Shown: positions 4,401 to 58,600, counted from the stretch's first letter. The stretch is DNA of 64,000 nucleotides from Pocillopora damicornis (GCF_003704095.1 NW_020843829.1:744001-808000); one strand, 5' to 3'. Made by a program: numbers and translations. The notes: generated by a model from the letters alone, not told the origin.

Positions 4401-4842
4401 TCGCTGTAACGAACTCTTCTGAACAATTTCCGAAACTTTCAAACTTCCTCGCACAGAATTTGTCCCCGAAGGTTCTTCTTCCCCGGAATCAACCATCAAA
4501 TTTGAGCCCAAGGCGGTTGATGGACTAGGCGCGGGCACAATATCCACATCGCTACCCTCCTGCGTGGCGCCTTCGGACGTTAAAACATTATCAGCATTCA
4601 CCATAGTAGCCTCAGCAACGCTAGCTATTTTCTCGAAAGGTAATGCTCCCTCTTTTAAGTTTGAATCGCTTTCACATTCCTCTGAAAAATTGTTCTGAGT
4701 GACCGTAACTTCTTGTTGGACAGAAACATTCGATTGTTCCTCCTTTTTCCGTTTCTGTACAGCTCCTACGGCACTCTTGGACAGCTCCTCTGCATCTGAT
4801 GAGAATGAATCATGTCTGAAAATTTTGTTGTAGCGATGTTTG
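1449..4842 (-). CDS. SSH: Slingshot terminal exon: ~1130-aa acidic, likely disordered C-terminal tail
   Basis: Long ORF 1449-4868 with a splice acceptor at 4843-4844, in frame with the preceding DSP exon (..GILNSS-KHRYNKIF); E/S/K-rich with repeated GLVKRHTLLIEGK motifs. Confidence 0.9.
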
Positions 4843-23573: not shown

Positions 23574-23986
23574 TCACCATCCGTCAACCGCTGGCGGCGC
23601 ATTTCGTCCACAGTAGCGGAGATTACATCCGGGAGTTGGGCCGAGTTTGTAAACGTAGAATCCACCACAATTCCTCACCAGTACCTTACGGCGAAGCTCG
23701 CAACAGCCGGACACATAATCACCAAAACAAACCATGCGTTCAACACACCCGTCATCTTTATGAGGATGCGAGCCAAACAACCAGCCGGGATATTGTGTGT
23801 TACATCTACCGGGGCCTGGGCATGCGTTTGGCATCTGAACCCCAGCGGAACCAGAAATTCGGTACCAACCCTCTGCTAAATTGTCGTCGCATTTACCCAA
23901 CAATTCTCGACTCATGAGGTTTCTGTCCTGCTCTGTCAGGAGGCGGTAGTGTTGGCATTCGTAAGCCACTAGTCCTACATTGTAAC
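23574..23986 (-). CDS. Terminal exon: uromodulin/GP2/OIT3-type Cys-rich (D8C-like) domain
   Basis: [24 protein letters not shown]....RCNT.YPGWL.G.HP...DG.V.R.VCF....CC.....[23 protein letters not shown]; AATAAA on the minus strand at 23493-23498. Confidence 0.88.
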
Positions 23987-26900
23987 CTAGAAAAATAGAA
24001 CGAGGCATAAAAAACGGCAGACTCATGCGTTGATAATCGAGTGTCATCTATGTCGAAATTAAATGTAAATTTCGAAAAAAAAAATGAGGTTTATGATTTG
24101 GAATAAGACACTTACAAATTGACGTTGATAATTGATTGATAATGGCGATAGTCTGGGTCGAATTCAAATCCAGCGCTAGTGTTTCATGCCGAGACGAGGA
24201 ATGTCGTTGACCCCCCTCCCCTCCTACGAGTGTTTCTGGTGTCGCTTTAGCCTCATCAGCAAGTAAAACAGCACGGAATCCGCGCGAAATAGAACACGGC
24301 GCAATAGTAGCAACAGTGGGAAAAAAACGAGAGAGGTTTGAGTCAGGTCGTTCATTACGCCACTATCTCGCCGTTTACAATCGCGCTTCGTTTTCCTTAA
24401 TGAAAAGTATGGAATAGGCTTATTTCATCTATGATTTTTAACTGATTAAAGCTTGATTTCCTCCGCACACTATACTCCAGGCCTGATCTTCCCCGGGTGT
24501 CTGTTTGGGGTAGGAGTGTGAGCTCATTTTCCGAACAACGGTGGGTTATCGAGGCTCATTTTCCGAACAACTGTTGGTTATCGAAGCTAACACTGCAAAG
24601 ACACGGAGCTACTAAAATGTAGAATTTAGTAAACTTACAATAAGGCTGAGTTCCGCTCCACACTCCATCTTTGCCACAAACTCTGGCAGACGATCCATAC
24701 AGCATACAGCCTGGATTGCAAGCAAACCTCACAATACTTCCCACAACAGAATAATCATCGCTTATCTTGTAACCGTCGACAGGATCAGCCAGCTCACGGC
24801 ACTTTTGAAGCTCTGCACACACAAGAAGTCAGCAAGAAATCAATTGTAGCAATTTCCAATCGAAATTAAGAGCAGGTTTCAATTAAATGACGCAAAATCA
24901 CAACCAAAGTAATCGCAATAGCCAATCATGAAAAAGGTTTGCGTCATCATGAGCTAATCATAAGAAAGGTTTGCGTCATCATGAACCACTCATAAAAAAG
25001 GTTTGCGTCATCATGAGCCGATGAGGAATCAAGGTGAAGAAAGGCATACAACCAAAAGCGCGGGAAAACGCGAGCGAACAAGGTATCCTTTGTTTCCAAT
25101 GCGTCTGAATGAGTTTAAGTATCGCGCGAGACTAATTACATTCGGAAATAAGCTTACGTTTAGTTTGTTCAGTCCTGCAAACAAGGATAAGTGTGAGTCG
25201 AGAACGCGACAAGTGCGAGAAGCGAGTCAAACGCGAAGAGAGGAGCGCGCCCCTTCTGAAAAACATCCCAAAAAAGACGCCTATTCTACAGAATACTCAC
25301 CAATTGTCGTCGTGTACGTGAATGGTTCGTTCCTCACAGAGGTTGTTCCAACGCATTTGTAATCTCCCTGCTCTTCGGGTCGAAGCCGCTCCAGGTTTAA
25401 TTCTCCAGTAACCTCATCGCCATCGATTATTGTCCTCGTTGGCATGGCAACACCATCCTTATACCAAGTGATATTCGGCATAGGCACACCACGTGCGGAG
25501 CAATTTACGCGGACAGGAGCATCGAATTCTTGGAGTGTCACAATGCTCAAAGGAACGTTTGTCACTTCCACTGGTTCTGGGAAAGAGTTTAAGGGACCAA
25601 TCAGTATTTGTCACCGGCGGTTGGGANNNNNNNNNNGGGGGAGTCAGTCCTCGCCATATTCAGTATTAAGGGAGACTATAGAAAATTGACTGCTAACACA
25701 GAACCATATGGGAGGATCAGGTAAAATTAACGTGACACAACCAAAATCCTCCGGCCACAAATAATTACTGGTCTTTTAGAAGTCAGTTTGGCAAGGATTT
25801 TAATCCTTACGATCAAAGTCCCACCGTAAAACCGAACCTGATCTATATTTATTACGATCGTGACAGAACCAGAATGAGCAATCCATATAGTTGGCCGATT
25901 TTCGAAGTTCATTCTGTGGGGGGAAGTCTTGTATGTCAGAAGACCTGATTCCTCAACTTTTACAAACTCTTACAATGAAACTTGTATCGAACAAACTTTC
26001 GTATGAGACCCTTGCTTGGGTCTGCTTGATGCAGGGATTTAGTCAGTTATTTATTAAAAGCCCCAAACTTTTCAAATAATGCGACGTCTTCGCAAATACG
26101 AAAAAAGGACGATTGAGAGTTGGGCTGATGTTTGACCAAGTTAGTACAGCTTGGCTTAACCGCTTGATCTCTAAGAGTGACTTACCCTTAATTTCTCCTC
26201 ACAATATTACCCCTGAATCACACACTAAGTCTCACGAGAATAAACGAAATGATCACCAACTGAGGAGGCTCTTGATTGTTAAAAAAATCCTCCCAGTCAG
26301 CACCTTACGAAATGTATGACAAACACTATTGAGCATATACTTACGGATGTTACGGTGTAACAGGGTTAGTGTAAGTTTCACTGCTCAAACAAACTCACCA
26401 TAGGTTTGTACTGTGACCTCAGTACCTCCCATAACAGACCCTGCTGGGTTTGAGGCGTGGCACATGTAGATGTCTTCATCCGCTTTGATAGGATTCCTTA
26501 AGTACAGGTTGTTATTTCGGATATAGTGCCTGTCAAAAGGAAGCTCCTTGTTGCCTTGACGACGCCATTCTATCTTGGGTGATGGAAATCCTTCTACATC
26601 GCATTTTATCTCGGTGATTTGATCCGTAAAAGCTGTGATTTTTGGCACGGGTGCTACAGAGAATGTCGGCTCGGCTAAAAAATAAGTCAAGAGAAAATTA
26701 CGAGTATCGTTTTTTTAGTTCTTAACGGAAAGAGCAGTTAGAACTGGAAGAGGCGGATCCAGAATTTCTGAACAGGGGGTTCTGCGCCTACGCCTCATTA
26801 TTAGCGCCTCAGTGGGAGCGGTTCTCCACTCTCCAATAAGTTTGAGGCATTGAGCAACATCAGCCGGCGAGGGGTCTGCAAGTGGTCTGACAAACGTCTC

Positions 26901-29900
26901 GCCGGCAAGTAATGCTTAAGGCCTTAAACTTACTCACGTGGGAAGAAACGCTCCCACTGAGGCGCTGATAATAAGAGCATGCTCGCAAGCTAGACGTTAA
27001 CGTTGCGATCGCTAGTCGGGTACACCAAGCTACACTAAAATGATTGCCAGTTATGTTTTCTTGGGAAGCTTGAAGTTGTCAGCTATACGAACAATAAAAT
27101 TACCATTTACCATCATTGTCAGATCACTTACTCGCTACGATAAGTTCTACGTTAGCGGTATCTGTACCCATGAGGTTACTTGCACGGCAAGTCCAGTTTC
27201 CAGAGTCCTCCGGGAGAGCGTTCTCCAAGGTGAAATAATTTCCGATGACCGCACGTCCATTGTTCTTTTTCACCCAAATTATTTCTGGTTTCGGTAATCC
27301 ATCGGCAGAACAACCTAGGACTATATAGTCTCCTTTCGTAGCTATGTAGGATTTCGGAGGCTTAGTTGTTATGTTCGGCTTGGCTGAAAAAGAGTTTTTG
27401 GAGGTTTGGTAACTGTGAAAGTACAACATTCACTGACCCACATGGTCCCATCCTAGTAATGTAATCTAAACGTACTCGAGCGAATGAAAGAATTTTTTGC
27501 TCTTTAATCCTTTACAACCTAACATCAGTATACATATTCTCGATACAATTCTCCGTACATTTCCTAAGGTGCTGACAGGAGAATTTGTTTAATTCCAATT
27601 TTGTCAAAAAAATCTTTGTTTATTCTGTTTTGACCCATAATTGTGTGCAGCCTTGGCAGCACGTGTGAGACGCATACTCGTGCGCACAAAGACGTACGTT
27701 CGTACATGCGTACGTACGCACGTGCATGCGTACGTGCGTACATTCGTGCGTACGTAGGTGCGTACATCCGTGCGTACATAAACGAACGTACGTCTTTGTG
27801 CGCACGAGTATCTCGCAACTTTACCGTGTGATTCAGGGTGATATTGTAGGGAGAAATTAGATGCTATCACTCGTAGGGGTAAAGGGCTTCAAGGAAGTAT
27901 CTCATGGCAACGAAAAAGCCTCCGAGAGAGAGGACATATAAAGCTTTTTAGGTTAGTTACCGTTAATTATCTTGAAAAAAGATAAATTCGCTAAATGAAT
28001 GTCGCTAAAATATGTATGTAACAAGGTAGCTTGGCCTTTCTTGAGGGTCTGGAAGCGTGATCTCTTCACAAAACTCGCCAAATGATTTTACAAATAGCAT
28101 TTACTCACAGAATCCTTCAAACGTTGGTGTTTTTTTGTCCGGCTCCTTTGTCTGCTTGCCATCTCCGTCTCCCGTTGGGCGTGTAACCTTTGTCGGAGCT
28201 GACCGCCCCGGGGGTCCAGGAGGGCCACGCAGACCCCGTGAGCCACGAGCCCCTGCTTTTCCTGAAGGACCTGGAGGGCCCGGAAGTCCGTTTGCACCCG
28301 GGGCCCCTGCAGTCCCCGGAGGGCCAGGTGTTCCTGCTGCTCCCGCTTGACCGTTTGCACCCGGCATACCAGGAGGACCAACAGGTCCTTGAACACCAGG
28401 GGGACCTGCGGGCCCCTGAATTCCTTGTGGACCCGGAGGACCAGGGATTGACTTCACATCTGTCAAGAGTAAGAATTTAAAACTTCCATCTTATCCTCAG
28501 TCTTCTTTCCTTCTAAAATCACTGTGAAGCGACAAATGAAGGCAAAATAACGGATAAAAGAAACGACAAGAATATTCTTAGGAATAGAAAGAAGGTGCCA
28601 GTCCTTGAAGAGCAAACAGCATTTACGTAATTACAGTTAATTTTTTTCAAACAACATGAATGAAAGCGATACTTTTCCCTAAGCCAAGAATCTATGGATT
28701 TCTTGAGAGATTGAGGAGATCAAATAAATACATGAAGACGCACGTTTAAGAACACGTAACAAGAAAACAATTTGGTATTCGAATGAGTGCATCGACAGGA
28801 ACGATAAAGGCTGACAGATTGGATGGATGAATCTTTTTATTGAAAGAAACCAAACAAGAAATGATAACTATGAATTCAGAAATGATAACAGATTGTACAG
28901 CCTTATGCCAAGTCACGGCTGGCTTCACCTACAATGGCAGTGCGGTGCGTACTGAATGGCAAAGTTTTCTGGTCACAGAGTATAGCATTGCTATGTGAAC
29001 AAGGAAGAGAAACACTTAATTCTATAGCAGCCTTTTGCCCTTGTCTAAAGCAGTGTAAACACTCGAAATTTCCAATTCACGTAAGAGCTTGGCGTAGTCG
29101 AGTGTAGCATGGCATAGCGAAGCAAGGTAGAACCTTGGCATAGCATGACTTTGCATAGCTTGGCGTGTCAGACAACATGCTTACTACATTACACTGCACG
29201 TGGACAGCATGCTTACTGCATTACCTTGCATTTAGACGGCATGCTTCTTACTGCATTACACTGCACGTGGACGGCACGCCTACAGCATAACACTGCATGG
29301 TATGGTCTGGCTTACCTTGGGCTGACTTACCTTAGTTTGGTTTGGCTTGGTTTAGAGACCCTCCCGCAAGGAGTAAGGAGGAAGTTTTAACTGATATGGC
29401 AATGACCGATGTGGGCATTTAGACGGTCATAGCATTGTTGCGCACTGCATAGCATTGCATGGCATGTTTCCTTGCTTGGCTTGCTCATAGCAGGTATAGC
29501 ATTGCATGACATTTCTTGTAAGGCATGGCATTGCATTTCTATTCACGACTTGGTATGATATGAATTAGTAAGATGTTTCTTGAATTGGAATTGAATCGCA
29601 ACATGTATGGTATGGCATATATGGTATGGCATAGAAGATAAAGCATGACATGTTCATAGGTACAGTGTGGGTTGGAGTGGCACCAGTTCATGATTTGCAA
29701 TAGTCTTGCATCAATTTGCGTGACATAGCGTGAGATGGAGAGTAGCTACGAGATGACTTTTAAAGAATCGTTCCTTCCTTATGAGATAAATAGTACATCC
29801 AACACAACAGCGTACAGTGTCCGGTTTGTCATGTATAACTAAACGTTTTTATGATCACGGTTTCTTTAAAAAATTAATTGCAAACAGCCTTGAAACGAGT

Positions 29901-32900
29901 ACCAGGATAAAGTAAATAAAGGTGCTGCGAACCTCGCTTTTACGATCAGCTACAATGAAATTCCTCTTTTAGATACACACACGCATTTTCCACTGTAGCT
30001 TTCGAAACACATGACATGCACATATAACGATTCAACACCAATTTTAAGGGCACTACAAACATAGTATGTTTAATACGATACTTTTAGAATTACGCATAAT
30101 TTTCGCAGCCGTCCATTGGAACGTCACGGCTGCCAGCAGACTACGAATTAAATAGATTACAGGAATCACTATAAAAAGAAACATTTTCATTCCTGTTTAG
30201 TGCATTAGAAATGTTCACAATTGATTTCAAATCATGCAATTTCGGTTCGAATGTTCTCTAAACCAGAAACTTACCTGTGATAGTTCTCAAACGAGAATTC
30301 ACCACTTCGATGATTTTTTGATTCAATTCGCTCCCATCTAGGGAAAGTTACATACAAGAAAATGCAGCATGCATGCATAAATTGATAAATATAATTTTAC
30401 ATGCAAGTAAACGTGCATCATGCACATGCAGTGATGGATACAATGCAAAAAAAAAAACTGACCAATAAAGCACATCCAGCACTACGTGTTCTTTCTTGTA
30501 TGGAAATATTAACGGCTACAATTAAATGCGCATATGCATAGCAATTTATGATATATCACTATACATTAAACAAAATAACAGATGATGACATGCAGTAGTA
30601 AACAGCATTCAGTTATCGAACGTTGATACAGAGTAAGAAATTGTAGGATATAAAAATCCTTCCATATTAAAAATTAGTTACGAACTTCAAATCAGCTAGG
30701 TACATTTTAATCAGATAAATGTGTATAAACAACATGCAAATTAATCATGTAACATACAACAGAATGAACGAGCAGCTAAAGTAGAGTCTATCCTTTGCAC
30801 GAAAGGGACCATGTAAAGACATGCGCGAGACCAATATGAAGAAAACATGCAACATATGCATCTCGCAATATGCAAGACATGCAATTACAGGTGGAGTAGA
30901 AATCATGCAACAATATGCACATTTACAACATGCAAATACACACCGTGCAACATGCAAATACACACCATGCAGCTTTAAGATATACACCATGCAACATACA
31001 AAAGACCCAAGAGTTGTTACTGCACTGTTCCATGCGTAAACAAGCATTAGATGCCAAAATGCCCATGCAAAACAAGCAAATATCACCATGACAGATATAC
31101 TTTAACTTTTGTAGCTATAAAAGCAGCAGAGACTGTATAGAGAGATAAAAACATGATAAAACTCAACATACATTATGCAACATACTAATGTTTGTAATGC
31201 AACCTACAGACTGATGATTGGGATTAAATCGAGTTAACAGCAACTGTTATTCGTAGTAGCAACACTATCCTATGCAAAAAAGCCCCACATAGCACAGTAT
31301 CACAGACTCTTTCTTCCACCCATGATCTCACCAACGAAAGCCTTAACAAAGCTCTGTATGGTGCGGTTATCAGACGGTCGAGATTGTAATGGCAAGGTAA
31401 GGTAAAGTAAAGTTAAACGACAACAGAAAATAGTTACTGACCACCTAAACTGATGTCACAGCCATATCGCGAAAATAGGCTAAAATGCTAACTACACTTA
31501 AGTGAGATTTGTTACATTATACCTACCGGTATACTTATCTAAATACGCTTCTAGAAAATTCTGGATTGTGCGGTTTAGGGGTGGCTGCGCTTCTGGTGAA
31601 AGATTGAGCCCATCTGAGTGGTAGAATTGTAAAATCTTTAGCAAGTAATACCTTAATCTTAAAGAGAGAAAAAAAAAACGTTGACATAGATATTCAAGCA
31701 TTTAAGCCGCGCACTAACCAATATGTTGATTCACGAAGGCGTTTACAATATTCTGGATCGTGCTGTTGTCAAGCGGCTCTGATTGCGGTTGTGATGCGGA
31801 AAGATTGCGCCCACCTTCAACGAAAAAAATCCTCTGTTCCAGAAAGACAATTGGAAGAACGGGAATGGTGAGAGAACTGCAGAAAGTCAAGTGGCTTACT
31901 CACCCAAATATTCCTGTACATAGTGCTCAACAAAGGGCTTAATTGTGCTGTTATCAAGAGGTAGACGTTGCGGTTGAAACGCGGAGAAATTGCGTTCATC
32001 TAAAAAAGACGTACATAACATTAGTCCCTGATAGAGTGCTTTTCGATTGAGTGTCGTAAAACGAAAACCAGTGAAATTATGACGGCCAGACATTATTTTT
32101 GACACTAAATTGATAACTGTTTCAAAACTATTAGGATCTGCCTATGGTTGAGACACATTTGATAACCGCGAAAACTTGAGCACCACAGACCTTGAAGTAC
32201 AGAGGCATTTATGAAGTGCTAAAATGCAATAAGTATGTCCTTTACTAACCGATGTATTCGTTCACATATTTCCGTACAAAGCTCTGAATTGTGCTGTTAG
32301 AAGGAGGAGTTGATTGCGGTTGCGTCGCGTTAATATTACGCCCACCTGAAATTAAAAAAAACAAATCATATCCACGCGAGAGAACATAGTGGTTGTGAAA
32401 CTCACACAAATTTTCAAAGCATAATAATGCTGGGATTTAAAGTACCACAGTATACCAACCACGATATTCAGCAAGATATAATTCAACAAGATTCTGGATG
32501 GTGCGGTTATCGTGAGGTTGAGGTTTCAGCGCAGAAAGGTTGCGTCCGCCTTGAATGAATAGGAATAAAAAGGGCAAGAGGTGAAGCGAACATCAAATAA
32601 CGTGAAAGAAAATGAATGCAGAACGACAGACATACGAATAACAACAGTATACTAACCCAGAATCTCTTTTATATAATCATTCACTAAATTTTGGATCGTG
32701 CGGTTATCAGGCAACTTCGGTCGAGGTTGTGATGCGGATATATTGAGTCCGCCTTCAATGAAAGAGGAAAAGCAAGATTACCATACTGAGAATTCTACAA
32801 ACAAGTCGCGTACCGTGATTGTGGGTTGTTTGTTTGTTTTTCTGCCCCTTCACGAAAAGAAGAAGTTGATGAGTACACGGAGTGCGGTTGTTCGGCAGCC

Positions 32901-35900
32901 AGAGGCATTGGGATTGTAAAGTGGGGAAATTCAGTCTTCCTTAATTTCCAGTAAAATTTCGTGTTTTTGCGTTTCTGTCTCAACTCTAGAAGCTGAAAAA
33001 TCTTTTGGAATGGAGTCGGCTCAAAGCTGTTTTAAATCATAGAAAATGACTGAATCGCGACACGAAAAGTCACTCGGATAACCGCAGTAACTAAACACTA
33101 ATGAACTCACCGACATACTCGTCAACATAATTCTCTACAAATTTCTGAATCGCATCATTATCAGGCGGTTGTGATGAGGATAAATTGAGGCTGCCTTAAA
33201 CGCAAAAAAAAGACGAGCTGTAATAATTTCTTGATATTCATCTTATCAAAGTTACAAGTGCAGTAAATCTCTTAAATTTGTTCCAGCAAATGTCTATATA
33301 CTCTTTCCCCAAATCAAGCATTGTATGACTATAAGACACTCTCGTCTCAGGCTATGACGATGATAAATATGTGGCCAGTTTACATAGAATACTCACCGAC
33401 ATATTGGTCAACATAGTCTTCTACAAAGCTCCGAATGGTTTGGTTATCAGGTGCTTGGTCTGCGGATTGTGATGAGGATAAATTGAGTTCATCTCGATTT
33501 AAAAAGAAAGACGTCTTCATCTTAGAATCTTAGGTTAAAACCTTCTTATAAAGGTTACAGGAGAGACACATCTTCACCCACCATGATGAGAACATACTCA
33601 CCAACGTATTCATCCACATAATCTTTGACAAACTTCTGTATGGTTCGGTTATCAGGGAATGAAAACTGTTGTGGTGAAGAGAGATTTAATCCACCTGAAA
33701 TGAAAGATGACAGCAGATTATCTGGCAAAGTAAACCTCCGTCAAAGTAACAGAGCGCCTTTTGATTGAGAGTTGTTAACCAAACCTAAATCAATTACAAC
33801 AGCCATTCACAAGTTATATCACATATACCATATCACATGTAAGCAATGCGAAAGAAAACCTGACATAAGCGCGGGAAAACGTGGATGGATGAGTCGTAAT
33901 TGATTTCAGTTTTGAGTGAATGGTTGAGAAGACAGAACGAGTTCAATGGACCAATCAAAGAGAAAGATAAAGAAAACCCAGTGGAATCGCTGCCTACTTA
34001 CGGTAACTTTCGAAACTCAGTAAAAGATTGCTAAATACAAGTGGACATAAATAGGGGCACTCCTACCTATAAACTGGTTTACATAGTCTTCAACAACGCT
34101 TTCGATAGAGCGATTACCAAGGCCGTTTGCCCGCTGCAGCGAGGAGGATAAATTAAGTCCATCTTTCAAAGAAAAAAGGAAATTTCATCTGCGTTAAGTA
34201 AAGGAAAAAAAACGAACTCGAAAACGCAGAATACCTTTGTAATCATCCTTTTGAGCATTTATGATTTCTTGAACCCTTTAACTCCCAAGATATGATTGTT
34301 AATTCTCTCCTCTCGCTGCAACACATTCCCTTGTAAATTAGTTATGGGAATTTGATGTAGATCAAAATAACTTCTGCTAACTTCTCCTCATAAGTTTGAG
34401 TATTCTCGTTACCTTTATCCCAGATATTGTACGGATATTATAGCGAGAAGTTACATATCAATCACTTCTTGGAATTAGGGTTAATCGAACGGTGATCAAG
34501 CGGCTGCAATTGCGAATGGAGCGAAGAAAGATCAAGAACGTCTAAAATAAAATACTGACGAAGAAGCATATCCAAAGAGAAAAGAGCACAAAACAGTAAA
34601 TTGCATACTACCTAATACTAACCTACATACACGTCTACATAACCTTCCACTAGCTTTCGGATTGTGGTATTTTGAAATGGTGGTGGTCGAGGTCGTGCTA
34701 CAGAAGAAATATTGAGTCCAGCTGAAATGACCGAAAAAAGACAACGAGGTCAAAATAAGATAATGTTTTCACTGTGCTGTAAAAAAATTCAAAAGGTTCA
34801 TGACAGACAGTCAGACAGTCTTATGATCATCCCATGCCACAGCACACCCACCTAAATAGCCGTCCACATAATCTTTCACAACGCTTTGAAGTGTGCGGTT
34901 GCCGAGCAATTGCGGTTGGGATGATGAAAAGGACAGATTAGATCCACCTTTAAGGAAAAGAATGTTATGCATGCCTCAGGATTTAAAGAGTACCACCACA
35001 TTCATCACTCACATGTTAAAAAAACACATACGTGATTTCTTTCGTAAACTTCGACAAGTTAACACAAGTTTTCTTGCAAGTCATGTGGTATTAAACAATT
35101 ATTCCACGAACGAGCGTTAGATATGAAATGATAGACAGACAAAGAGGCCCGTAAGGCCGAGTTGGCTGTAATCATCTCATTTCCAACAAGCGCAAGTGCA
35201 ATGATTGTTTTATTAAAAAAAACCCAAAATATAGATAAATCTTCCCAACTTTACTGTATTACAATGTACAAAAACACTCCCCGTTTGACTCGGCTTCATG
35301 CGCGCGCATGGTATAATGGCTCATAACCCACGATGGCTGAGCCAATGAAAACTCTAGTAGTGCATTATCCAATAATCCAGTTTTTAATGCTTCAAGTTAT
35401 ACTACACTCACCAACATATTCATCAACATAATCTTTTACGTATCTCTGTATGGTGAGATTAATAGGACGTCCATTGTGTTTTTGTGCTGAAGAAAGATTG
35501 AGTCCATCTGGTACAGAACAAAAGAAATCTCATAAGAAGGAAAATGGCATCCAATTTTAGGGATGAAATTACCATGTCCATGGGACAAAGAATATGGCAC
35601 GTAATCTAAATGCAATCGTGCACTTTACTTGTTTTCCGTAAACGAAAATAGTCATTTTCCACCAGGACAGCGCTTCAGGATGTACTTACAAATGTATCCA
35701 TGGACATATTCTTACACAAAGGCCTGAATAAGTAGGTCATCAGGTTTGTGTCTGGTTAAAAAGTATAACGCCTCCCTCAGTAAAATGAAGTAATACGAAA
35801 GACAACAAATGAAAGATTCATCAATGAACAGTTGAGGCAATTAAAGAAAGAGACAGAGAATATATATCATTTTCATTAATTTTATCATTCAATATAACTN

Positions 35901-38900
35901 NNNNNNNNNNNNNNNNNNNNNNNNNNNNNNNNNNNNNNNNNNNNNNNNNNNNNNNNNNNNNNNNNNNNNNNNNNNNNNNNNNNNNNNNNNNNNNNNNNNN
36001 NNNNNNNNNNNNNNNNNNNNNNNNNNNNNNNNNNNNNNAATGCAAAGACTAAGTCGTAGCGCAAAAAATGATGTTCAAATGAAACCTTTCTTCCTATCAC
36101 CTCTCTCCTTGAAAATGCATTGATAATGTATAGAGAAATTCATTTTTGGTCTGCACTATCAGGAAGGAGAGGGTTAACAATGCCTTATACTCACCAACGT
36201 AATCGTCTACATAAACTTTTACAAAGCTCTGGATGGTTCGGTTATTGAGAAACTGCGTTTGCGGTGATGACGCGGTCAAATTAAGTCCACCTTTTTTTTT
36301 CATATTGGATAAGAAAATAGACATCCACATTAGAAGGCGAAGGTATCACTAACATTTTAATAAAACACTTTGACCTTGCAAGCTAAGCATGCTTACCTAT
36401 ATATACATTCACATAATCTTGCACAATATTTTGGAAGGTCCGATTGTCGGCTGGTAGACTGAGTTTACCCGCTGAAATTACGAACAAAGATAAGTCCTTG
36501 GGCAATGAATTTGGAACAAATCCTATCATCTCATCCTAAACTAGGGAGTGTTAATCGACCAGGGTAACCACGGTTGGTATGTAAAAATGAAACAAATAAA
36601 TTAAGGGGTGAGGTTCTATAGAAACTGTGGTGCTGCGTCAGTGGAGGAGTAAAACAAGATAATTTGGTTTATCAACAAAGTTGATAAAGTAAATTGGCCA
36701 CCGTAAAGAGTTTCTGACCTGGCGTTTCGAGCGTTAGCCCTTTGTCAGAGCGAAGGACGAAGGGCTAACGCTCGAAACGTTAGCTTAGAAACTCTTTACG
36801 GTGGTAAATTTACAACATCACCTCAGTTGATAAAACCAGAATTATCTAAAAATATAACAGTTTTCTTTTACTTAAAGACACATTTCTGCAAAGCGCAAAT
36901 AAGACGATAAACATTATCCTATCACAGCTCCTATAAACTTGAACACTGGAGATAAATACCTAAAGGTATAGATTGTAAGATTCATGCGGCCGTGTGAAAG
37001 ACAAAACTATACCCACCCAAATAATTGTCGACGTGAATCCTCGCAAAGTTCTGAATGCTACTGTTAAGCAGCTTCAGCTGGGGCTGGGTTTGTGCTTGAG
37101 ATGAAGAGAGATTGAGGTCACCTTGGAAAAGAGAATAGTTAAATCAGCAACATTATCATTGAAATGGCACATGTGTCGAAAAATAAACACCACGATTGGT
37201 GACATTTCTTAAAACTCAAAACAATGCAAACAAATGAAATTGTACCCACCCACAAATCTGTCGACATAATCCTTTACAAAGCTCTGTATCGCGCTATTGT
37301 CTGGCAACTCTACTTGCTGTTGTGGTGAGGAAAAGTTTAGCGCCGCTTGAAAAAAGGAAATGAGAAAATGGAAATGCGTCATCACTTTCAAAGTACAACA
37401 GGTTTTTTCTGGAGAGGGACCAAAAAGATTATCAATAGAGTGAAATCATAGGCACTAGACATTTTACAGTGTACCCACCAACAAACTCGTCTACGTATGC
37501 TTTGACAAGGCTCCGTATAGTGCGGTTATTGGGAGTCCGTGTTTGAGATTGTCGCGATGAAAAATTGAAACCACCTTGAGTTGATAAAGAGGAATAAAAT
37601 TAAAATCGTAATAAAGAAAATACCTGTTGAAAAGGAAAGAAATCACTCTTTAAGGAAACATATGTAACTGTTCTATGTAAAACCATGAACGCATTGCATG
37701 AGACATAATACAAACCTGTAAACGAACGCACATAATCTTTCACGATGTCCTGCACACTGCTATTATCAGAAAGCTGCTGTTGCCTCGTCGATGCCGTAAG
37801 ATTAAGTCCACCTTGAAAGGAAAAATAGCGATATAATCAAACAACTGCACACTTACGCCTCCCTCAACCCTAAGTTGTTATCAGTCGACTGTTGTTGGGT
37901 TAGGGGAGGAGTAGGTAAGCAGTTGCTCAGATAATGACATTGATCGACAACGTCACCCTGGGACTATGAAGTGTTTGGTAATTGGGTGCACAGTAAGTAT
38001 AGTATTGCACGTGATGTATCGCTGTTGGCTTCCGCAAGCACAAACGCAAGCGTAACAGCTCTAATTGACCGTTAAAACGGCCTCGAAGGAGGCAGAAATC
38101 ACAAGCTCAAGCTCAAGTAGAAGGATCATAATTTTTCCTTTTTCTTGACCTTGAGTCGTGGCCGTTTTTATAGTGAAACAAGAGCTGTTATGCTTGCGTG
38201 TGTGCTTCCTTTTATGTTTGCGGGGAGTGTGCATGCGTTGCCAGTAAAAGCCAGGCCTTAGAGTGATTTGTAAATGACTTTTTTTTTTATATACAGATGC
38301 GTGTAAAACAGTCACACGTATAAAGGCATCTAGAGAATACTCACCAACATATTCATCAACATAATCTTTGACAAAGCCCTGAATAGTTCGGTTATCATTA
38401 GCTTTTACTCCTGACAGAAACAAATTAAACAATGATCAATAAACTTACAAACAAACTAACTAAAAAAATATAACAACAAAACAGATTTAATATCCTCGTG
38501 AGACAATCCAACCATCACGTATTTAAAAGTAGGTTGAAAGTCGATATATCGTCATACACCATGCCACAGGGTACCTACCCGAATACTTCTCTGCATAAGC
38601 TTGAACGAAGCTCTCGATTGTTTTATTACCAGATTGGGGCGGCTGCGACGAGGAAAAATTGAATTCAGCTGAAAAAACAATAACAGAGACATTAGAAATG
38701 CTACAGATTGTTATGTCACAGTATACTAACTAACATATTCGTTAACATAGGCCTCAAAAAGTATAGGATGGTTCTTTTATCAGGAAGTTGTGGGAGCTGT
38801 TACAACGACAAAAAATTCCTTTCCTCTGTCATGACTGAATAAACAGCACGAAATTGAACGAGTCTAAGCAATATCAAAGTAATTCAAAAGCACTGAATAA

Positions 38901-41900
38901 GCTCATCTTGTAAGCGTCTTGAAAGTCTGAACGTTAAAATAGCAATAGTCACAAATCCAGACCCCCTCAGATAAAAAGTTTCATCAAAACGAGAAACTCA
39001 ATACTATAAAAATACGAACAACATCAAATATCACCCTAGAACTGACGGTTACAACAATTCCATTTGTGACGAATATAAGAGATCCTCGCAACTATGAACA
39101 CTACTGAACTAGTAGTTGATATAATACCTGAAAAAAATTCAGGCCCGTACGGGATTTGAACCCATGACCTCTGCGATACCAGTACAGCCAACTGAGCTAA
39201 CAAGCCAACTGGGAGTTGGTAATTAAGTTGGGTCACGGTTGGTAGAGCGCTGCACCGGTATCGCATAGGTCATGGGTTCAAATCCCGTACGGGCCTGAAT
39301 TTTTTTCAGGTCTTATTTCAACTACTAGTTCAGTAGTGTTTATAGCTGCGAGGATCTCTTATATTCGTCTCTTCACAGCACTGCATATATACGATTTTCA
39401 TATATCTACAAACATAATTCCATTTGTGACTACGCAGTACACTGACCCAGATATTCATCCACATAATTCTGGATAAATTTCTGCATCGTTCGGTTATCTG
39501 CCATTACTGACGCTGCTTGTGAAGAGGAGGATAAATTGAGTGCACCTTGGAAGAGATAAATATAAAAATAGTAAAATACAGAGCGGTCTTCAAAGAAACA
39601 AACGAGACACCGTCATAAATATACAAATACAAGAGTATAACGCCCAACGTATCTGTATATTCAAGCCAATTGGTTGTCTGGCGTACAAGTTTGCGACTGA
39701 TGATCTCCAATAGAGAGATGAAATCAGCTATCATATGACGTTAGAAATAATGGGCTGTTATAATTTATAAGGGAGGTAGTTTTCTGAACAAAATGTGGTG
39801 CTGCGTTGATGGGGCATTACAAGAGGATTTCATTTTATCAGCTGGGTCGATAACGTAAATTGGCCGCCGTAAAAAATTTCTAAAGTTGACGTTTCGTGCG
39901 TTAGCCCTTCGTTAGAGCTAATCCTGTTATAACTGATGAAAAGAAACAGAAAGAGAGTTATGATGGCACTATATCAAGTACGTACTGATATGATCATCAA
40001 CATAAGCCTTCACGAAGCTCTTAATAGTGCGATTATTAAGCAGCTGAGGCTGTGACTGTTGGAGCTCTTGGGATGAAGAAATATTTAGTTCACCTAAAGA
40101 CGTAAAAAGAGCAACAAAACATGTACTGAAAGGACATTTCAAAACTCTCACACAAAGAAATTCTGAAAGGGACGAACAAATAAAACAAAATCACAGAAAA
40201 AAAAGCAAACAAACAAACAAAGACATGGCGTATTTACCCAAATACTCGTCTACATAAGCTCTGACAAAAGTCTGGATAGTGTAGTTATCTGGGAGTTTTG
40301 GCTGCGGTGCTGAAGAGGAAAAACGTTCTCACATCGTTAATGGTAATATATGATTAATATAAAATATTCTGAATCAAACTGCGAAAAAAAGGAAGAGGAA
40401 ACTGTGACTTGCAATTTACTTACTGGAACTGAGCTCTGTAGGTTGCCAGGTTTAGGAGTGGCTGTCCGTTGCAGCGGGATGTCTACATTATGCACTTATC
40501 ATAAACTACCAGAAGTCGTACAATTTTATTCTATCCATAAATGTAACCCATGAAATTCCTGCAATCAATTTCTATACTCATGTAGTTGGTGCAATGGTTT
40601 AAAAAAATATTTATGCTCTGGATATCATTCGTGCAATTCATGCCTCGCACAGTGCAAATTAACTATCGTGCTACTTAAGTTGCCTCAAGTCATGCATTAA
40701 GCAATTAAAAAAATGTAAACCATCAATGCAAGCAAATTAAACAAGGATTAAGATCAATTCATTTCCTTTCATGCATCATGTAAGAGAAGTAATTCATGCC
40801 ATTGATGCAAAACATGCTCATGCAATTCTGATGATGCATGCATTCATGCTAACTATGCAGTATGCAATGAAACCAATACACGCCGTATATTTAAGACTAT
40901 CATGCTTTTCAATGCATAATGTGCATTATGCAAGTTAAGCAACTCATGCTGCCTGTCATGCAATTTAAGTAATGCGCATTGTCAATCTAAATCATGCACC
41001 ATGCAATTACGGAAATTCATGCCATCTGAGGAAAGAATGCATCGTGCCCCTAAAAAAATATATTCTGTCCATTCAAATCTTGCATCATGCTAGCGACGTA
41101 GCTTTTGCCGTCCAAGGAAATCTTGCATAGCGCAATCGAAGTCAATCGCACCGCTTTTTTGCGCAATTATGTCGTCCGTTTCAAACCGAGGGGTGAGTTT
41201 TGTAATCAAATGCTCCGCGCAGTTGTTAACCATGTAATTTTAGAGCGTTCGGAATCACGACATTTGAGTGAGGCGTTTTCAGAACAGGCAAAAAATGGAT
41301 GGTTGTGAAAACGAAATAGTGACAAAGTAATGGAATGACAGCATACGTAGAGGTGAATGCATGGTGTTTTGACTCTTCTTCCTAAGGGAGAAGATATGTC
41401 AGATAGACCTTCTTCCGTTGAGGGTAGTTTAAGGCTTACCAGAGTCCCCTTTGTCTTCAAAAAACTTCATCAAAGACCGCGAAACAGAATCGTCTACAAA
41501 CATCTCCAATGGAGTCTTATCGCCAGGTCCTGAAGCGCCAGGTACAAACGAGGGACCTGCAATCAGTGACGAAGGATTCTTATCTTATAAACCTTCTGAA
41601 CGTTAATTTTGGCAAAGGAACTAAAAAAAATACCATATCGAAGGAAACGAGAACTTCGACACTTCACCAACATAGAATTCAATTCTCGACTGATACTCAT
41701 GCCCTGCATTAATATGTTTTAGTTCAGTGATGAAAAGATAGATGTTCGTTTATTTAATGTTTGTTACTTCAGAGGACCTTTCAGTGGCGCGAGTAAATCA
41801 AACTTCAGGGAGCTACAGAGGAGCCAGTGCGTTCTTGTACACTTGACCATTTAACTCCCAGAAGTGATCAACATGAAACTTCTCGCTATAATATCCTTAC

Positions 41901-55602: not shown

Positions 55603-58600
55603 ATGTTGACATTAAGGTATTAGTAGCTAATTTTTAAACTTAAACCTATCTATTTTGGGACTGCCTTTTAAATATGATTTTTTTTAATACTTGGTTGCTT
55701 GTAAGAACCATACACCCTTGAGGTGCAATCAAATATGAGATTTAATTCTTGGATTCCATGAATTTGGTGAATTAAAATTGCAGTGAGGCTGCGACATAAG
55801 TATTAATTAAAATTGTTAAAAACTCATAGCTTCCTTTTGTTTCGATTAACGATTCTCTCAATCTTGTAGCCTTCTCCTAGTGCTGGGGGTATGTCTCTTC
55901 CAAAGCGGGCCTTCCGTTGGTGGAACACCTGACAATTCCGATACATTTTTAAGGGTTGACAGCATGTGTCAACCGATACCTCTGTATCTTCGTCTAAACT
56001 GTATCAGGCGCCGTTACCGCACGTTCGACGGGACGTGCAACAATCTGTGCAACATAACCGAGGGCTCCGCCGAGACTGGATTCGACCGCTTCCTCCCACC
56101 AGCCTTTCAGAACGGAGATGGACCTAGACTCATGTCTTCATCTGGTGCTCCACTGAAGAACGCGCGAACAATCAGTAAAAACGTGTTCAAGAGTACGTCT
56201 GAAGATGTAGGTGGAAAACCTCCACCTTTCACTCACGTGACCATGACGTGGGGTCAATTTATAGATCATGACATCACGTTAACTGAGTCCAACGAGACTG
56301 CGGGATGCGGGACCAACAACGAACAATGTCCCACCAACATTCCCGGATGTATAAGCATACCGATCTCACAGAACAACCCCGATGATCGACTGGCAAACAA
56401 TGTAACTGCACAATGCATTCCCCTATCACGATCAGCATTGAGGGATCGTGAACAGGTGAGAGATTCCTGCAGTCTTAAGCGTCATTTTCATCCGCATTGC
56501 AGTTAACATTTATCTTTTATAAACAAACGAATCCCGTGAGAAAAGTTATATTTTCTTATGTGACATAACATTGCGGGGCAGAAGAGAGAAAAGTTTGATG
56601 AAACTTTGAATTTATGCGCAACTTTGAAGAAACGAAAAGAATTTCTGTTGAGCACATAACGCGAAGTACAAATAGAATTGGAGGTCCCAGTATTGATCAA
56701 TCACGGGGGAAGTGCTACCCTTTGAAATAAACACTACTTCGATTTAGCAAAAGAAACCGACAAAATACTCGTTCGCTCTTTTTCAGGTTAACTTAGTTTC
56801 ATCCTACATTGATGCTTCGATGGTTTATGGAGCTAATTGTGAAGAGGCAGAGAGCCTCCGTGACAAAATAGCAAATACTGGATCTTTACGCGTTCTCCCA
56901 CTGCCAGTGAGACGCTCCGACAGGATGCCAATTTTACCTGAAGCTAGCCCAGAATCCTTTTGTAAATCACCGAGACCTGCAGTGAGGCCTTGTTTCCTAG
57001 CTGGTGATTTTAGGAGAGTCAATGAAAATCCCGGTAAGAATTTGTGCGGGACAATATATCTCCAGCTATCCATCAGGAGGACGTCTCTCTTATTTACACA
57101 AATTCTGTTGTGGTCGTAAGCGAGACTGAATAGATATTTGCCAATAAGCATAGGGATAAAAACAGAGAATCTTTTAAGCTTGTATCTCTTATATGCATGC
57201 AACTTTTAATTCCCCATTTTCAGTAATCGTTTTTATTAAGGAACACAACAACCCCGTAAATATTATGAATTCAGTTTGAACGAAGAGAGTAACACCTAGC
57301 TCATGAAAAATCAAATAATCATGAAGGGCAAAGTTTAACAGAAAGTAACTAAATCCCGTTCTCTTTTCCTTATCTTTCAGCGCTTATGGTAATGCACACC
57401 CTTTTTGTGCGTGAACATAATCGCATTGCACAGTTCCTTCATTATCTGAATCCAATGTGGCAGGATGAAAAGCTTTTTCAGGAGGCACGAAAAATAGTGA
57501 TTGGTCAAATACAGCACATTACATACAACGAATGGCTTCCTGTTCTGTTTCCTTCTAAAAAATTGGTGAGGATCGATTTATTTATGAAATGCATGATACT
57601 TTATGATACTTCGCGTTTTTCACCTGCTGCACCGATTGCTTCGATTAAAGTCAGTGATCATTACGTTCAGCCAACTAGTGTTGTCACAGACCTTGGAGCC
57701 GTCACGCTTGATTCACACCTCACCCTAGTTCCCCTTGTCAACAACACCTGTCGCGTTCGTTTCATTCTATTGGCAGAATCAGAAATTATCTTTCGCAAGC
57801 GGATACTGGGCGCATTGTTCATGCCTTCGTTTTATCGAAATTGGATTATTGTTATGGTTTGCTCTATGGAATTCCCTCCAGTGAAATTGAGAAACTTCAG
57901 AGATTACAGAATACCGCGGCAAGATTAACTGTGTGCATGAAGAGGACTGATCATATTACTCCTGTTTTAAAAATTTTTGCACTGGCTTCCTGTTAATGAC
58001 AGAATAATTTTTAAGTTACTTTCGATTACGTACATATCTTTTAATGGCCTTGCCCCGGTGTATATTAATGAACTGTTTCATCATTACACTCCCTGTCGCT
58101 CTCTTTCTTTCTAGAAATTCCAACCTTCTAGTTATCCTTAAGACTACCCCTAAGACTACTACAGTTTCTAACGGAGATAGATCTTTTGAGGCAATTGTTC
58201 CGAAGTTATGGAATCAGCTACCGCTTGCCATTAGACAAATTAACTGTTGATAGTTTTAAAAAGGCGTTGGAAACGTACCTGTTTCATGAGAGCTCTTTTT
58301 TTTAGTTGTAAAAAGCATCGAGACATTTATATGTAGAATGCGGTTTTTAAGAACTCTAATTATTATTATTGATTTATCCAAAATGTTCTACTGGACAATT
58401 CGATTAAGAGCTCGAGTTTCAATCGCGTGATTATTTATGGAAATCGAGAACGAATGGTTTAATTGTTTTGGCATAAAACTACTTGTCGTTCACAACTTAA
58501 CAACAAGGAAGGCGCATGTTTTTATTGATAGTCAATGATGGACTATTTAGTTTACTCACTACCTATCAAAGAATAGATAGTGAGTTGCGAAGCCAATATA

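What the first reader, a model, noticed from the sequence alone, without database searches (positions are those of the whole stretch)
31320..40309. Hidden array of ~27 duplicated symmetric mini-exons encoding a variable helical glyco-repeat in a transmembrane collagen-Ig-sushi-UMOD protein
Seen: about every 200-600 bp on the minus strand there is a 66-108-nt AG..GT exon, always a multiple of 3 and phase 1-1, encoding diverged copies of one unit (e.g. [95 protein letters not shown]). Most are missed by the ORF track. The 24 intact units total 2220 nt (740 aa). Most units keep two N-x-S/T sequons and an amphipathic I..FV..YV..Y(V/L) helix, while the S/P/Q linker and the introns have diverged, which indicates protein-level selection. 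Established: symmetric same-phase exons can be skipped in any combination without a frameshift, as in Dscam clusters and titin PEVK exons. Inference: this is either a splice-tunable spacer setting how far the collagen/Ig/CCP/UMOD head projects, or a combinatorial diversity cassette in a surface or shed recognition protein. I do not recognise the repeat as a named domain.
Basis: partly seen in the sequence, partly recalled or inferred. Interest (0 to 1): 0.93.

Follow-up and report, generated by a model that had tools for sequence, protein, structure and literature searches.

The report
Mini-exon repeat stalk of coral membrane collagen
A coral gene for a membrane-anchored collagen builds its long, sugar-coated extracellular stalk from about two dozen tiny same-phase exons. 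The exons are real and expressed, encode an unnamed repeat, vary in number between corals, and are skipped only occasionally rather than shuffled into many combinations.

Summary
On the minus strand, 31527-40309 holds 24 intact AG..GT exons of 66-108 nt, all phase 1-1, 2220 nt in total. There are also four decayed copies. Each exon encodes a roughly 32-aa unit: an S/P/Q linker with an N-x-S sequon, then N-R-T and a 16-residue amphipathic helix. The unit matches no Pfam family or PDB chain and occurs nowhere else in this 234-Mb genome.

It belongs to a 22.5-kb gene orthologous to Pocillopora verrucosa LOC131781004, which RefSeq calls "uncharacterized". The protein has an N-terminal signal anchor, the repeat stalk, 27 collagen triplets, three Ig domains, a sushi domain and a D8C domain. 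There is no ZP domain.

RNA contigs from four studies splice the 13 units nearest the gene's 3' end consecutively and join them to the next exon. RefSeq isoforms X1-X7 skip one unit or a block of 8-9 units, and two units use internal CAG acceptors. So this is mainly a constitutive stalk with limited in-frame splicing, not a Dscam-like diversity cassette.

Two other coral contigs carry 33 and 47 units. In all three loci dense sense-strand UGCAUG clusters bracket the array.

The assembly gap is intronic. Earlier notes of the scan concern only this window.

The parts
45728..46069 (-). Exon 1: start codon, short cytoplasmic tail and 22-residue hydrophobic signal anchor (type II orientation)
   Evidence: tblastn of RefSeq X2 residues 1-114 at 99% identity; sequence read
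44363..44746 (-). Single exon with five 26-aa N-x-S/helix repeats (QQVVxEYVExYF), probably distant relatives of the array unit
   Evidence: hhalign P=4e-4 over 19 columns; AlphaFold2 gives five helices but pLDDT is only 38
41440..41556 (-). Last exon before the array; ends in phase 1
40691..41005 (-). Upstream sense-strand UGCAUG cluster (7 UGCAUG; 13 GCAUG in 401 nt)
   Evidence: conserved in L013 and L014
40238..40309 (-). Unit exon 1, 72 nt, phase 1-1 (short, one sequon)
   Evidence: in RefSeq isoforms
39986..40093 (-). Unit exon 2, 108 nt
39447..39545 (-). Unit exon 3, 99 nt
38732..38799 (-). Decayed unit (frameshift)
38579..38668 (-). Unit exon 4, 90 nt; intact sites but absent from all six RefSeq proteins checked (X3 not retrieved)
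38345..38410 (-). Unit exon 5, 66 nt; skipped in isoform X4
37716..37811 (-). Unit exon 6, 96 nt; first exon of the block skipped in X6 and X7
37479..37574 (-). Unit exon 7, 96 nt
37250..37345 (-). Unit exon 8, 96 nt
37017..37121 (-). Unit exon 9, 105 nt
36397..36471 (-). Unit exon 10, 75 nt
36195..36290 (-). Unit exon 11, 96 nt
35900..36038 (.). Assembly gap (N), inside an intron; not filled
35688..35777 (-). Decayed unit (in-frame stop)
35412..35507 (-). Unit exon 12, 96 nt; last exon of the X6 skipped block
   Evidence: RNA joint 34947>35412
34852..34947 (-). Unit exon 13, 96 nt; skipped in X5 and X7
   Evidence: RNA joints
34623..34721 (-). Unit exon 14, 99 nt
   Evidence: RNA joints
34483..34530 (-). 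Decayed unit (truncated)
34067..34162 (-). Unit exon 15, 96 nt
   Evidence: RNA joints
33602..33694 (-). Unit exon 16, 93 nt
   Evidence: RNA joints
33397..33492 (-). Unit exon 17: 96 nt in run X6 and RefSeq; 63 nt (internal CAG acceptor, start 33459) in runs X1, X9, X13
   Evidence: arithmetic on contig record positions
33111..33194 (-). Unit exon 18, 84 nt
   Evidence: RNA joints
32657..32752 (-). Unit exon 19, 96 nt
   Evidence: RNA joints
32460..32549 (-). Unit exon 20, 90 nt
   Evidence: RNA joints
32250..32345 (-). Unit exon 21, 96 nt
   Evidence: RNA joints
31904..31999 (-). Unit exon 22, 96 nt
   Evidence: RNA joints
31719..31814 (-). Unit exon 23, 96 nt
   Evidence: RNA joints
31527..31613 (-). 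Unit exon 24, 87 nt; isoform X2 uses an internal CAG acceptor (start 31592, minus 7 aa)
   Evidence: RNA joints 30337>31527 and 31613>31719
31320..31436 (-). Decayed last unit, not spliced in
   Evidence: skipped by joint 30337>31527 in three runs; in no RefSeq isoform
30233..31069 (-). Downstream sense-strand UGCAUG cluster (16 UGCAUG in 871 nt), inside the 1189-nt intron that is retained in part of the RNA contigs
   Evidence: conserved in L013 and L014
30275..30337 (-). 'Neck' exon ([21 protein letters not shown]), phase 1-1, directly before the collagen
28110..28466 (-). Collagen exon (27 uninterrupted G-X-Y triplets)
   Evidence: Pfam PF01391
25302..27384 (-). Three Ig (I-set) exons: 27127-27384, 26400-26708, 25302-25577
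   Evidence: Pfam
24637..24813 (-). Sushi/CCP exon
   Evidence: Pfam PF00084
23577..23984 (-). D8C (uromodulin-like) exon and stop codon; no ZP domain follows
   Evidence: Pfam PF23283

Best explanation
The stretch is the middle of one 22.5-kb minus-strand coral gene (46069..23577). The gene is the orthologue of Pocillopora verrucosa LOC131781004.

Shown:
- 24 intact mini-exons, each phase 1-1, each encode one roughly 32-aa unit.
- 23 of them are spliced head to tail into a Cys-free segment of about 710 aa with about 42 N-glycosylation sequons.
- This segment lies between an N-terminal signal anchor and a 27-triplet collagen helix, which is followed by three Ig domains, a sushi domain and a D8C domain.
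- The protein is therefore a type II membrane collagen, and the array is its extracellular stalk.

Predicted:
- Each unit is a flexible S/P/Q linker followed by a 16-residue amphipathic helix capped by an N-R-T sequon.

Inferred:
- Collagen forces a parallel trimer, so the helices of the three chains probably pack into short three-helix bundles separated by glycosylated hinges.
- This would give a long, glycan-sheathed, semi-rigid rod that holds the Ig-sushi-D8C head far from the membrane.

Stalk length is set mainly by unit number. The number changes in evolution through gain and loss of units: 24, 33 and 47 units in three corals. Length is changed only secondarily by in-frame skipping of one unit or of an 8-9-unit block, and by internal CAG acceptors that trim the first sequon.

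Conserved UGCAUG clusters on both borders suggest control of splicing at the array's edges by an Rbfox-type factor. This last step is inferred and untested.
For: - Exon anatomy, phases, lengths and sequons.
- All profile hits lie on one strand at this single locus of the genome.
- Flanking Pfam domains.
- Full gene map and signal anchor.
- Spliced RNA contigs of four studies join 13 consecutive units and the following exon through GT..AG introns.
- RefSeq isoforms X1-X7 and which units each contains.
- Helix prediction for the unit (pLDDT about 90 for the helix).
- No Cys in the array, 27 G-X-Y triplets, and hydrophobic periodicity near 4 residues.
- Purifying selection on the units (pN 0.28 against a saturated pS of 0.80; exons 61% identical against 33% for introns).
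- Orthologous arrays with 33 and 47 units, 31 and 44 of them intact and in phase 1-1.
- Collinear reciprocal-best units between the window and L014, and recent block duplications in L013.
- UGCAUG clusters. Such clusters are rare in the genome (168 triple-motif matches in 234 Mb, 8 of them at this array).
Against: - No experiment or trimer model supports bundling of the helices. The complex prediction could not be run.
- The hydrophobic period is near 4.0, not a classical heptad.
- The related N-terminal repeat exon folded with pLDDT 38 only.
- Membrane topology was read by eye, not with a predictor.
- RNA evidence is from assembled contigs, which drop rare isoforms, and covers only the half of the array nearest the gene's 3' end. 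The 5' half rests on RefSeq models of a sister species.
- The function of the head domains is unknown.
- An Rbfox gene was not demonstrated in this genome. The Fox-1_C search was empty and uninformative, since it also found nothing in the controls.
Confidence: 0.6

Rival explanations
1. Regulated, splice-tunable spacer. Cell types or stages would switch between long-stalk, short-stalk (block-skipped) and perhaps head-less forms. The switch would be driven by an Rbfox-type factor acting on the two bracketing UGCAUG clusters.
For: - All exons are phase 1-1, so any subset stays in frame.
- RefSeq isoforms X4-X7 skip one unit or 8-9 units.
- Internal in-frame acceptors differ between RNA studies.
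- UGCAUG clusters are conserved at the motif level in three corals, although the cluster sequences of the window and L013 do not align. Such clusters are rare genome-wide.
- The intron that holds the downstream cluster is retained in a partly spliced contig of run X1, and unspliced contigs of X6, X9 and X13 lie within it.
Against: - Contigs of four studies all carry the full consecutive series for the 13 units examined.
- No quantification, tissue or stage information is available.
- Isoform models may reflect rare splicing noise.
- The retained intron is also simply the longest intron near the array.
Confidence: 0.2
2. The units are not a passive spacer but the working part: a multivalent display of N-glycans or an adhesive module. 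It might bind lectins, microbes, symbionts or the extracellular or skeletal matrix. The number of units would then set avidity.
For: - There are about 42 sequons in 710 aa, and the N-R-T sequon is nearly invariant (N is the only invariant column).
- Individual units have collinear orthologues across genera and are about 97% conserved between two Pocillopora species. A pure spacer would not need this.
- Unit number differs greatly between species.
Against: - There is no ligand, localisation or glycosylation data.
- Conservation of the helix face is equally explained by packing within a trimer.
Confidence: 0.15
3. Combinatorial diversity cassette in a recognition protein (Dscam-like): each cell or transcript chooses a different subset or a single unit.
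For: Same-phase exons would allow it. Several isoforms are annotated.
Against: - RNA contigs join neighbouring units one after another, so inclusion is not mutually exclusive.
- Only six variant forms are on record (seven RefSeq isoforms; X3 was not retrieved), and they differ by one unit, one block or one acceptor.
- Units differ mostly in the linker, not in a plausible binding face.
Confidence: 0.03

Closest known systems
Type II membrane collagens and class A scavenger-receptor-like proteins (collagens XIII/XXIII/XXV, SR-A1, MARCO, collectin-12, gliomedin); compared from my own knowledge of these families
   Same: N-terminal signal anchor, a non-collagenous helical or spacer region, a collagen triple helix, then C-terminal recognition domains. 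The logic is a trimeric stalk that projects a head.
   Different: The spacer is a roughly 710-aa array of an unnamed N-glycosylated 32-aa unit, not a continuous heptad coiled coil. The head is Ig x3 + sushi + D8C, not SRCR, C-type lectin or olfactomedin. No sequence relationship exists outside the generic domains.
Titin PEVK exon array (established: one roughly 28-aa repeat per small symmetric exon, differential exon skipping sets spring length)
   Same: One repeat per mini-exon, identical phase at both ends, and in-frame skipping that shortens an extended spacer.
   Different: This is an extracellular glycoprotein, not an intracellular spring. Skipping here is documented only as a few isoform models, and contigs show the full-length form. 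The sequences are unrelated.
Dscam mutually exclusive exon clusters
   Same: Tandem arrays of duplicated, diverged exons in a cell-surface Ig-superfamily protein.
   Different: Here the exons are included in series, not one per cluster. The units form a stalk rather than variable Ig half-domains.
RefSeq gene LOC131781004 of Pocillopora verrucosa (XP_066018855.1 to XP_066018861.1, 'uncharacterized protein', isoforms X1-X7)
   Same: Orthologue. Units are 90-100% identical to the window's exons, in the same order, with the same flanking domains.
   Different: It is an automatic annotation only, with no name, domain or publication. Unit 38579-38668 is not in the six proteins checked.
Rbfox-regulated cassette exons with intronic (U)GCAUG clusters (Jin et al. 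2003, EMBO J 22:905, as listed in the references of PMC8584187; the positional 'RNA map' is from my own knowledge)
   Same: Dense, strand-specific, evolutionarily conserved UGCAUG clusters in the introns flanking alternatively spliced exons.
   Different: The clusters bracket a whole array of 24-47 exons rather than one cassette. Neither the factor nor any dependence on it has been shown in corals here.

Membership tests
Type II membrane collagen / scavenger-receptor-A-like architecture | Uncleaved N-terminal signal anchor | tested here: met
   A 22-residue hydrophobic run lies at residues 17-38, after a charged 16-residue tail. All Cys- and sequon-rich domains are C-terminal to it. This was read by eye; no topology predictor was available.
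Type II membrane collagen / scavenger-receptor-A-like architecture | Collagen triple-helix segment | tested here: met
   Pfam PF01391, E=1.5e-17; 27 uninterrupted G-X-Y triplets.
Type II membrane collagen / scavenger-receptor-A-like architecture | Trimerising alpha-helical coiled coil N-terminal to the collagen | tested here: inconclusive
   The unit's helix is predicted with pLDDT about 90. Its hydrophobic period is about 4.0 rather than 3.5.
Type II membrane collagen / scavenger-receptor-A-like architecture | SRCR, C-type lectin or olfactomedin head (for SR-A/MARCO, collectin-12, gliomedin) | tested here: not met
   The head is Ig x3, sushi and D8C.
Type II membrane collagen / scavenger-receptor-A-like architecture | Furin-type shedding site in the ectodomain | tested here: inconclusive
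   There is one R-F-R-R at residues 266-269 of X1. My estimate of the chance expectation is about 0.3 per protein.
Symmetric mini-exon repeat array with length-tuning exon skipping (titin-PEVK type) | One repeat per exon, same phase at both ends | tested here: met
   24 of 24 exons are phase 1-1 and multiples of 3. The same holds for 44 and 31 units in L013 and L014.
Symmetric mini-exon repeat array with length-tuning exon skipping (titin-PEVK type) | Differential inclusion of units in transcripts | tested here: inconclusive
   RefSeq isoforms skip 1, 8 or 9 units, and alternative acceptors are seen. Contigs of four studies, however, carry all 13 examined units. No quantification was possible.
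Dscam-type mutually exclusive exon cluster | Only one exon of the cluster is included per transcript | tested here: not met
   Joints link each unit to its neighbour. RefSeq X1 contains 23 units.
Any named protein domain or repeat for the unit | Significant match to Pfam, a PDB sequence, or an ESM Atlas cluster | tested here: not met
   Pfam: nothing below E=0.2 for the 25 units. PDB profile search: best E=0.6. Atlas: no usable hit.
Uromodulin/GP2 (ZP-domain) family | D8C domain together with a ZP polymerisation module | tested here: not met
   D8C is present (PF23283). No ZP domain is found, and the protein ends 11 residues after the D8C match (residues 1456-1534 of the 1545-aa X7).
Rbfox-regulated alternative exons | Conserved intronic (U)GCAUG clusters next to the regulated exons | tested here: met
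   UGCAUG counts upstream / inside / downstream of the array: window 7/0/16, L013 14/1/23, L014 37/2/29. It is the top 6-mer in five of the six flanks and tied second in the window's upstream flank and rare genome-wide.
Rbfox-regulated alternative exons | Presence of the factor and dependence of splicing on it | not testable with these tools
   The PF12414 search of the genome was empty, and it was also empty in the controls, so it is uninformative.

The most novel reading that the evidence does not exclude
The array behaves as one regulated 'super-cassette'. The two conserved UGCAUG clusters would let an Rbfox-type factor decide, per cell type, between three forms. These are a long stalk, a block-shortened stalk (as in isoforms X6 and X7), and a head-less form made by retaining the downstream intron; I read a stop 8 codons into the retained intron. 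If so, it would be a pre-bilaterian example of Rbfox-controlled tuning of the reach of a cell-surface receptor, built from a coral-specific glyco-helix repeat that changes in copy number between species.
Probability: 0.15. Interest if true: 0.8.

Novelty: new variant of a known kind. Interest (0 to 1): 0.55.

Why it matters
- It defines an undescribed extracellular repeat (linker plus N-glycan-capped amphipathic helix) that no domain library holds. So far it is seen only in reef-building corals.
- It gives an anatomy to an 'uncharacterized' RefSeq gene: a type II membrane collagen with an Ig-sushi-D8C head.
- It offers a clean natural system in which stalk length varies two-fold between species by exon gain and loss, with every exon in the same phase. 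This is useful for asking how the reach of surface receptors evolves.
- The motif-level conservation of UGCAUG clusters on both borders in three corals makes an old question directly testable: how far back Rbfox-type control of splicing goes in animals.

Tried and rejected
- **Trimer prediction.** There is no verdict on helix bundling.
- **Fold of the N-terminal repeat exon.** AlphaFold2 gave pLDDT 38, which is unreliable.
- **ESM Atlas.** No usable hit and no model.
- **PDB profile search.** Nothing.
- **Pfam on the units.** Nothing.
- **Homologue search with the head region.** It returned only generic collagen VII, hemicentin and IgSF10 hits apart from the P. verrucosa isoforms.
- **Homologue search with the repeat region.** It found only P. 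verrucosa.
- **The look-up of encoding contigs for X7.** Not on record.
- **Fox-1_C domain search in the genome.** Empty and uninformative.
- **Paper searches.** Searches for the gene id, for 'transmembrane collagen' with Pocillopora, and for D8C with coral and collagen gave nothing relevant.
- **Dscam-like reading.** Rejected on the consecutive joints.
- **'Exon' 31320-31436.** Rejected, because spliced contigs skip it.
- **Joined spliced model.** Exons were used one by one by reference (alignment A1), and whole-protein work used the RefSeq proteins that the tools returned.

Full report
**What is in the sequence**

I built a profile from regex-seeded copies of the unit and searched all six frames of the window. 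It finds 25 copies at E<1e-7. All are on the minus strand between 31333 and 40325, and there are none elsewhere in the window.

Reading each copy with its flanks shows a common pattern. An AG acceptor is followed by two bases that complete a Gly/Ala/Asp codon. The exon ends with a single G before a GT donor, which is phase 1 at both ends.

Twenty-four exons are intact:
- Their lengths are 66-108 nt, all multiples of three.
- They sum to 2220 nt = 740 aa and carry 43 N-x-S/T sequons.
- The introns between them are 89-778 nt, with a median of 168 nt.

Four more copies are decayed:
- 38732-38799 has a frameshift.
- 35688-35777 has an in-frame stop.
- 34483-34530 is truncated.
- 31320-31436 has no in-phase acceptor near the motif.

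The alignment of the units (A1, built exon by exon by reference) has the consensus GGLNLSxxQxQxxxxDNRTIQxFVxxYVDxYxG. Its only invariant column is the Asn of the second sequon.

Paralogous exons are 61% identical over their last 48 nt, while the intron flanks are at 33%, which I take to be background level. In the helix codons pN is 0.28 against a saturated pS of 0.80. The duplications are therefore old and the peptide is under purifying selection.

**The assembly gap**

The N run at 35900-36038 lies in the intron between exons 36195-36290 and 35412-35507. It interrupts no exon. Every exon is self-contained in phase, so the reading frame does not depend on it. The P. verrucosa proteins join the two flanking units directly.

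**The gene**

Pfam finds these domains on minus-strand open pieces downstream of the array:
- collagen at 28104-28490
- three Ig domains
- a sushi domain
- a D8C domain at 23577-24047

I searched the unit profile against 1.84 billion representative proteins. It gave one full-length hit plus about 120 short single-unit fragments from coral-associated metagenome contigs. The full-length hit is XP_066018861.1, 'uncharacterized protein isoform X7' of Pocillopora verrucosa, gene LOC131781004.

Mapping isoform X2 onto the window places the gene at 46069..23577 on the minus strand. Its parts, in order, are:
- exon 1, with the start codon, a charged 16-residue tail and a 22-residue hydrophobic anchor
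- one exon (44363-44746) with five 26-aa repeats of a related motif (hhalign P=4e-4)
- a Gly-rich region
- the array
- a 21-aa 'neck' exon
- 27 G-X-Y triplets
- three Ig domains, a sushi domain and a D8C domain, then the stop codon

There is no ZP domain, so 'UMOD' means D8C only. The array has no cysteine.

In the window's own 234,350,878-base, 4,393-contig assembly, all 25 unit matches lie in this one locus. The assembly size agrees with the published P. damicornis assembly of 234 Mb (PMC6208414), and exons are 90-100% identical to P. verrucosa. The source is therefore probably P. damicornis. This is an inference.

**Expression and splicing**

RNA runs of coral and marine metatranscriptomes hold 16-22% of the sampled words of 31300-35890. 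That is about the exon share of the stretch.

I laid contigs of four runs from four studies on 30200-35890. They show GT..AG joints linking each unit to the next:
- 30337>31527, 31613>31719, 31814>31904, 31999>32250
- 32345>32460, 32549>32657, 33194>33397
- 33694>34067, 34162>34623, 34721>34852, 34947>35412

Single contigs of up to 3954 nt carry the whole series. The units are therefore transcribed, spliced in frame and joined to the downstream exon. The decayed copy at 31320-31436 is skipped.

Arithmetic on contig positions shows that exon 33397-33492 is 63 nt long in three runs, using an internal CAG acceptor at 33459. It is 96 nt long in the fourth run.

The 1189-nt intron after the last unit is present in a contig of run X1 that is spliced at 31613>31719; contigs of X6, X9 and X13 lie within that intron. 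The short introns inside the array show almost no intronic contigs. Retaining that intron would, by my reading of the sequence, bring a stop codon 8 codons into the intron.

Mapping the window's exons on the RefSeq isoforms gives:

| Isoform | Content |
|---|---|
| X1 (1797 aa) | 23 units, inferred from its length (X2 + 7 aa); X1 itself was not mapped |
| X2 | trims 7 aa from the last unit through an internal CAG acceptor |
| X4 | skips 38345-38410 |
| X5 | skips 34852-34947 |
| X6 | skips the eight units from 37811 to 35412 |
| X7 | skips nine units |

None of the six proteins mapped contains 38579-38668, and X1's length leaves no room for it; X3 was not retrieved.

Inclusion is thus the main form. 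A small number of in-frame variants exist.

**Structure**

AlphaFold2 on one unit, with the 25 paralogues as its alignment, gives a coil for residues 1-16 and a helix for residues 17-32. The helix has pLDDT around 90. Hydrophobic positions recur at i, i+3/4, i+7/8 and i+11/12, with the periodicity peak near 4 residues. This is an amphipathic helix but not a classical heptad.

The fold of the N-terminal repeat exon was unreliable, with pLDDT 38. A trimer prediction could not be run. Bundling of the helices in the collagen-imposed trimer is therefore my inference.

**Other corals**

Two long contigs from ENA assemblies carry orthologous loci:
- L013 has the pre-array exon, 47 units (44 intact, all phase 1-1 and multiples of three), collagen and Ig. 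Its first Ig domain (Ig1) is 73% identical.
- L014 has 33 units (31 intact) followed by Ig exons at 84-87% identity.

Between the window and L014, eight reciprocal-best units are collinear. In L013, 21 of 44 units have a paralogue at 80% identity or more, and four-unit blocks are visibly duplicated. The array therefore evolves by gain and loss of units, while individual units persist across genera.

**The borders**

Following two earlier notes on this window, I counted sense-strand UGCAUG:

| Locus | Upstream of array | Inside array | Downstream of array |
|---|---|---|---|
| Window | 7 in 466 nt | 0 in 9 kb | 16 in 871 nt |
| L013 | 14 | 1 | 23 |
| L014 | 37 | 2 | 29 |

The window average is 0.6 per kb.

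TGCATG is the most frequent 6-mer in five of the six flanks and tied second in the window's upstream flank. GCATGA is preferred upstream and GCATGT downstream. The window and L013 clusters do not align by blastn, so it is the motif, not the sequence, that is conserved.

Triple UGCAUG within 30-nt gaps occurs only 168 times in the 234-Mb genome, many of them in microsatellites. Eight of the 168 are at this array.

**Comparison with known systems and verdict**

The architecture works like a type II membrane collagen or class A scavenger receptor: anchor, helical spacer, collagen, head. It has a different head and a spacer made of an unnamed repeat.

The gene structure works like the titin PEVK exon array. 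It fails the defining feature of Dscam clusters, which is mutually exclusive choice.

The gene is already modelled by RefSeq in a sister species, but it is unnamed and unpublished.

I file it as a new variant of a known kind. The anatomy is well supported. The stalk function is well motivated but untested, and regulation through the bracketing UGCAUG clusters is an open, testable idea.

Noticed in passing
window 30338-31526 (minus strand): The long intron after the last unit is retained in a partly spliced RNA contig of run X1 (spliced at 31613>31719 but unspliced here). Unspliced contigs of runs X6, X9 and X13 also lie in it, while the short introns inside the array show almost none. Reading through would stop the protein 8 codons into the intron.
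   Followed up: partly
window 34190-34569: An intronic dispersed repeat reaches summed contig depths up to about 41,000 in all four RNA runs. Many different flanking sequences adjoin it (loose ends with low agreement). It is probably a SINE-like element expressed in many transcripts, not part of this gene's mRNA.
   Followed up: partly
window 39141-39206 (minus strand): A tRNA-like Rfam match (30.1 bits, just over the gathering score of 29) lies in the intron between units 3 and 4. It is possibly a tRNA-derived SINE.
   Followed up: no
window 31313 and 31269: All four RNA runs carry one extra T after 31313 relative to the window. Run X1 lacks 24 nt at 31269. Both differences are intronic and are either polymorphisms or small assembly differences.
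   Followed up: no
window 1452-4868 (minus strand): An uninterrupted 1139-aa open frame is rich in Ser, Glu and Lys and has a recurring 'GLVKRHTLLIEGK(L/I)QP' motif. It is a separate gene. A piece at 5199-5438 on the same strand looks phosphatase-like.
   Followed up: no
window 60028-60654 (plus strand): A 209-aa open frame looks by eye like an animal haem-peroxidase fragment.
   Followed up: no
window 57712-57993 (plus strand): An open frame looks like the C-terminal part of a retroelement reverse transcriptase.
   Followed up: no
window 43716-43805 (protein residues 266-269 of X1): A single furin-like R-F-R-R motif lies in the ectodomain between the N-terminal repeats and the Gly-rich region. 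It could be a shedding site, as in other membrane collagens, but one such motif is near chance expectation.
   Followed up: partly
L013 4189-5797: A four-unit block is duplicated in tandem with near-identical units. This is direct evidence of recent unequal crossing-over inside the orthologous array.
   Followed up: partly
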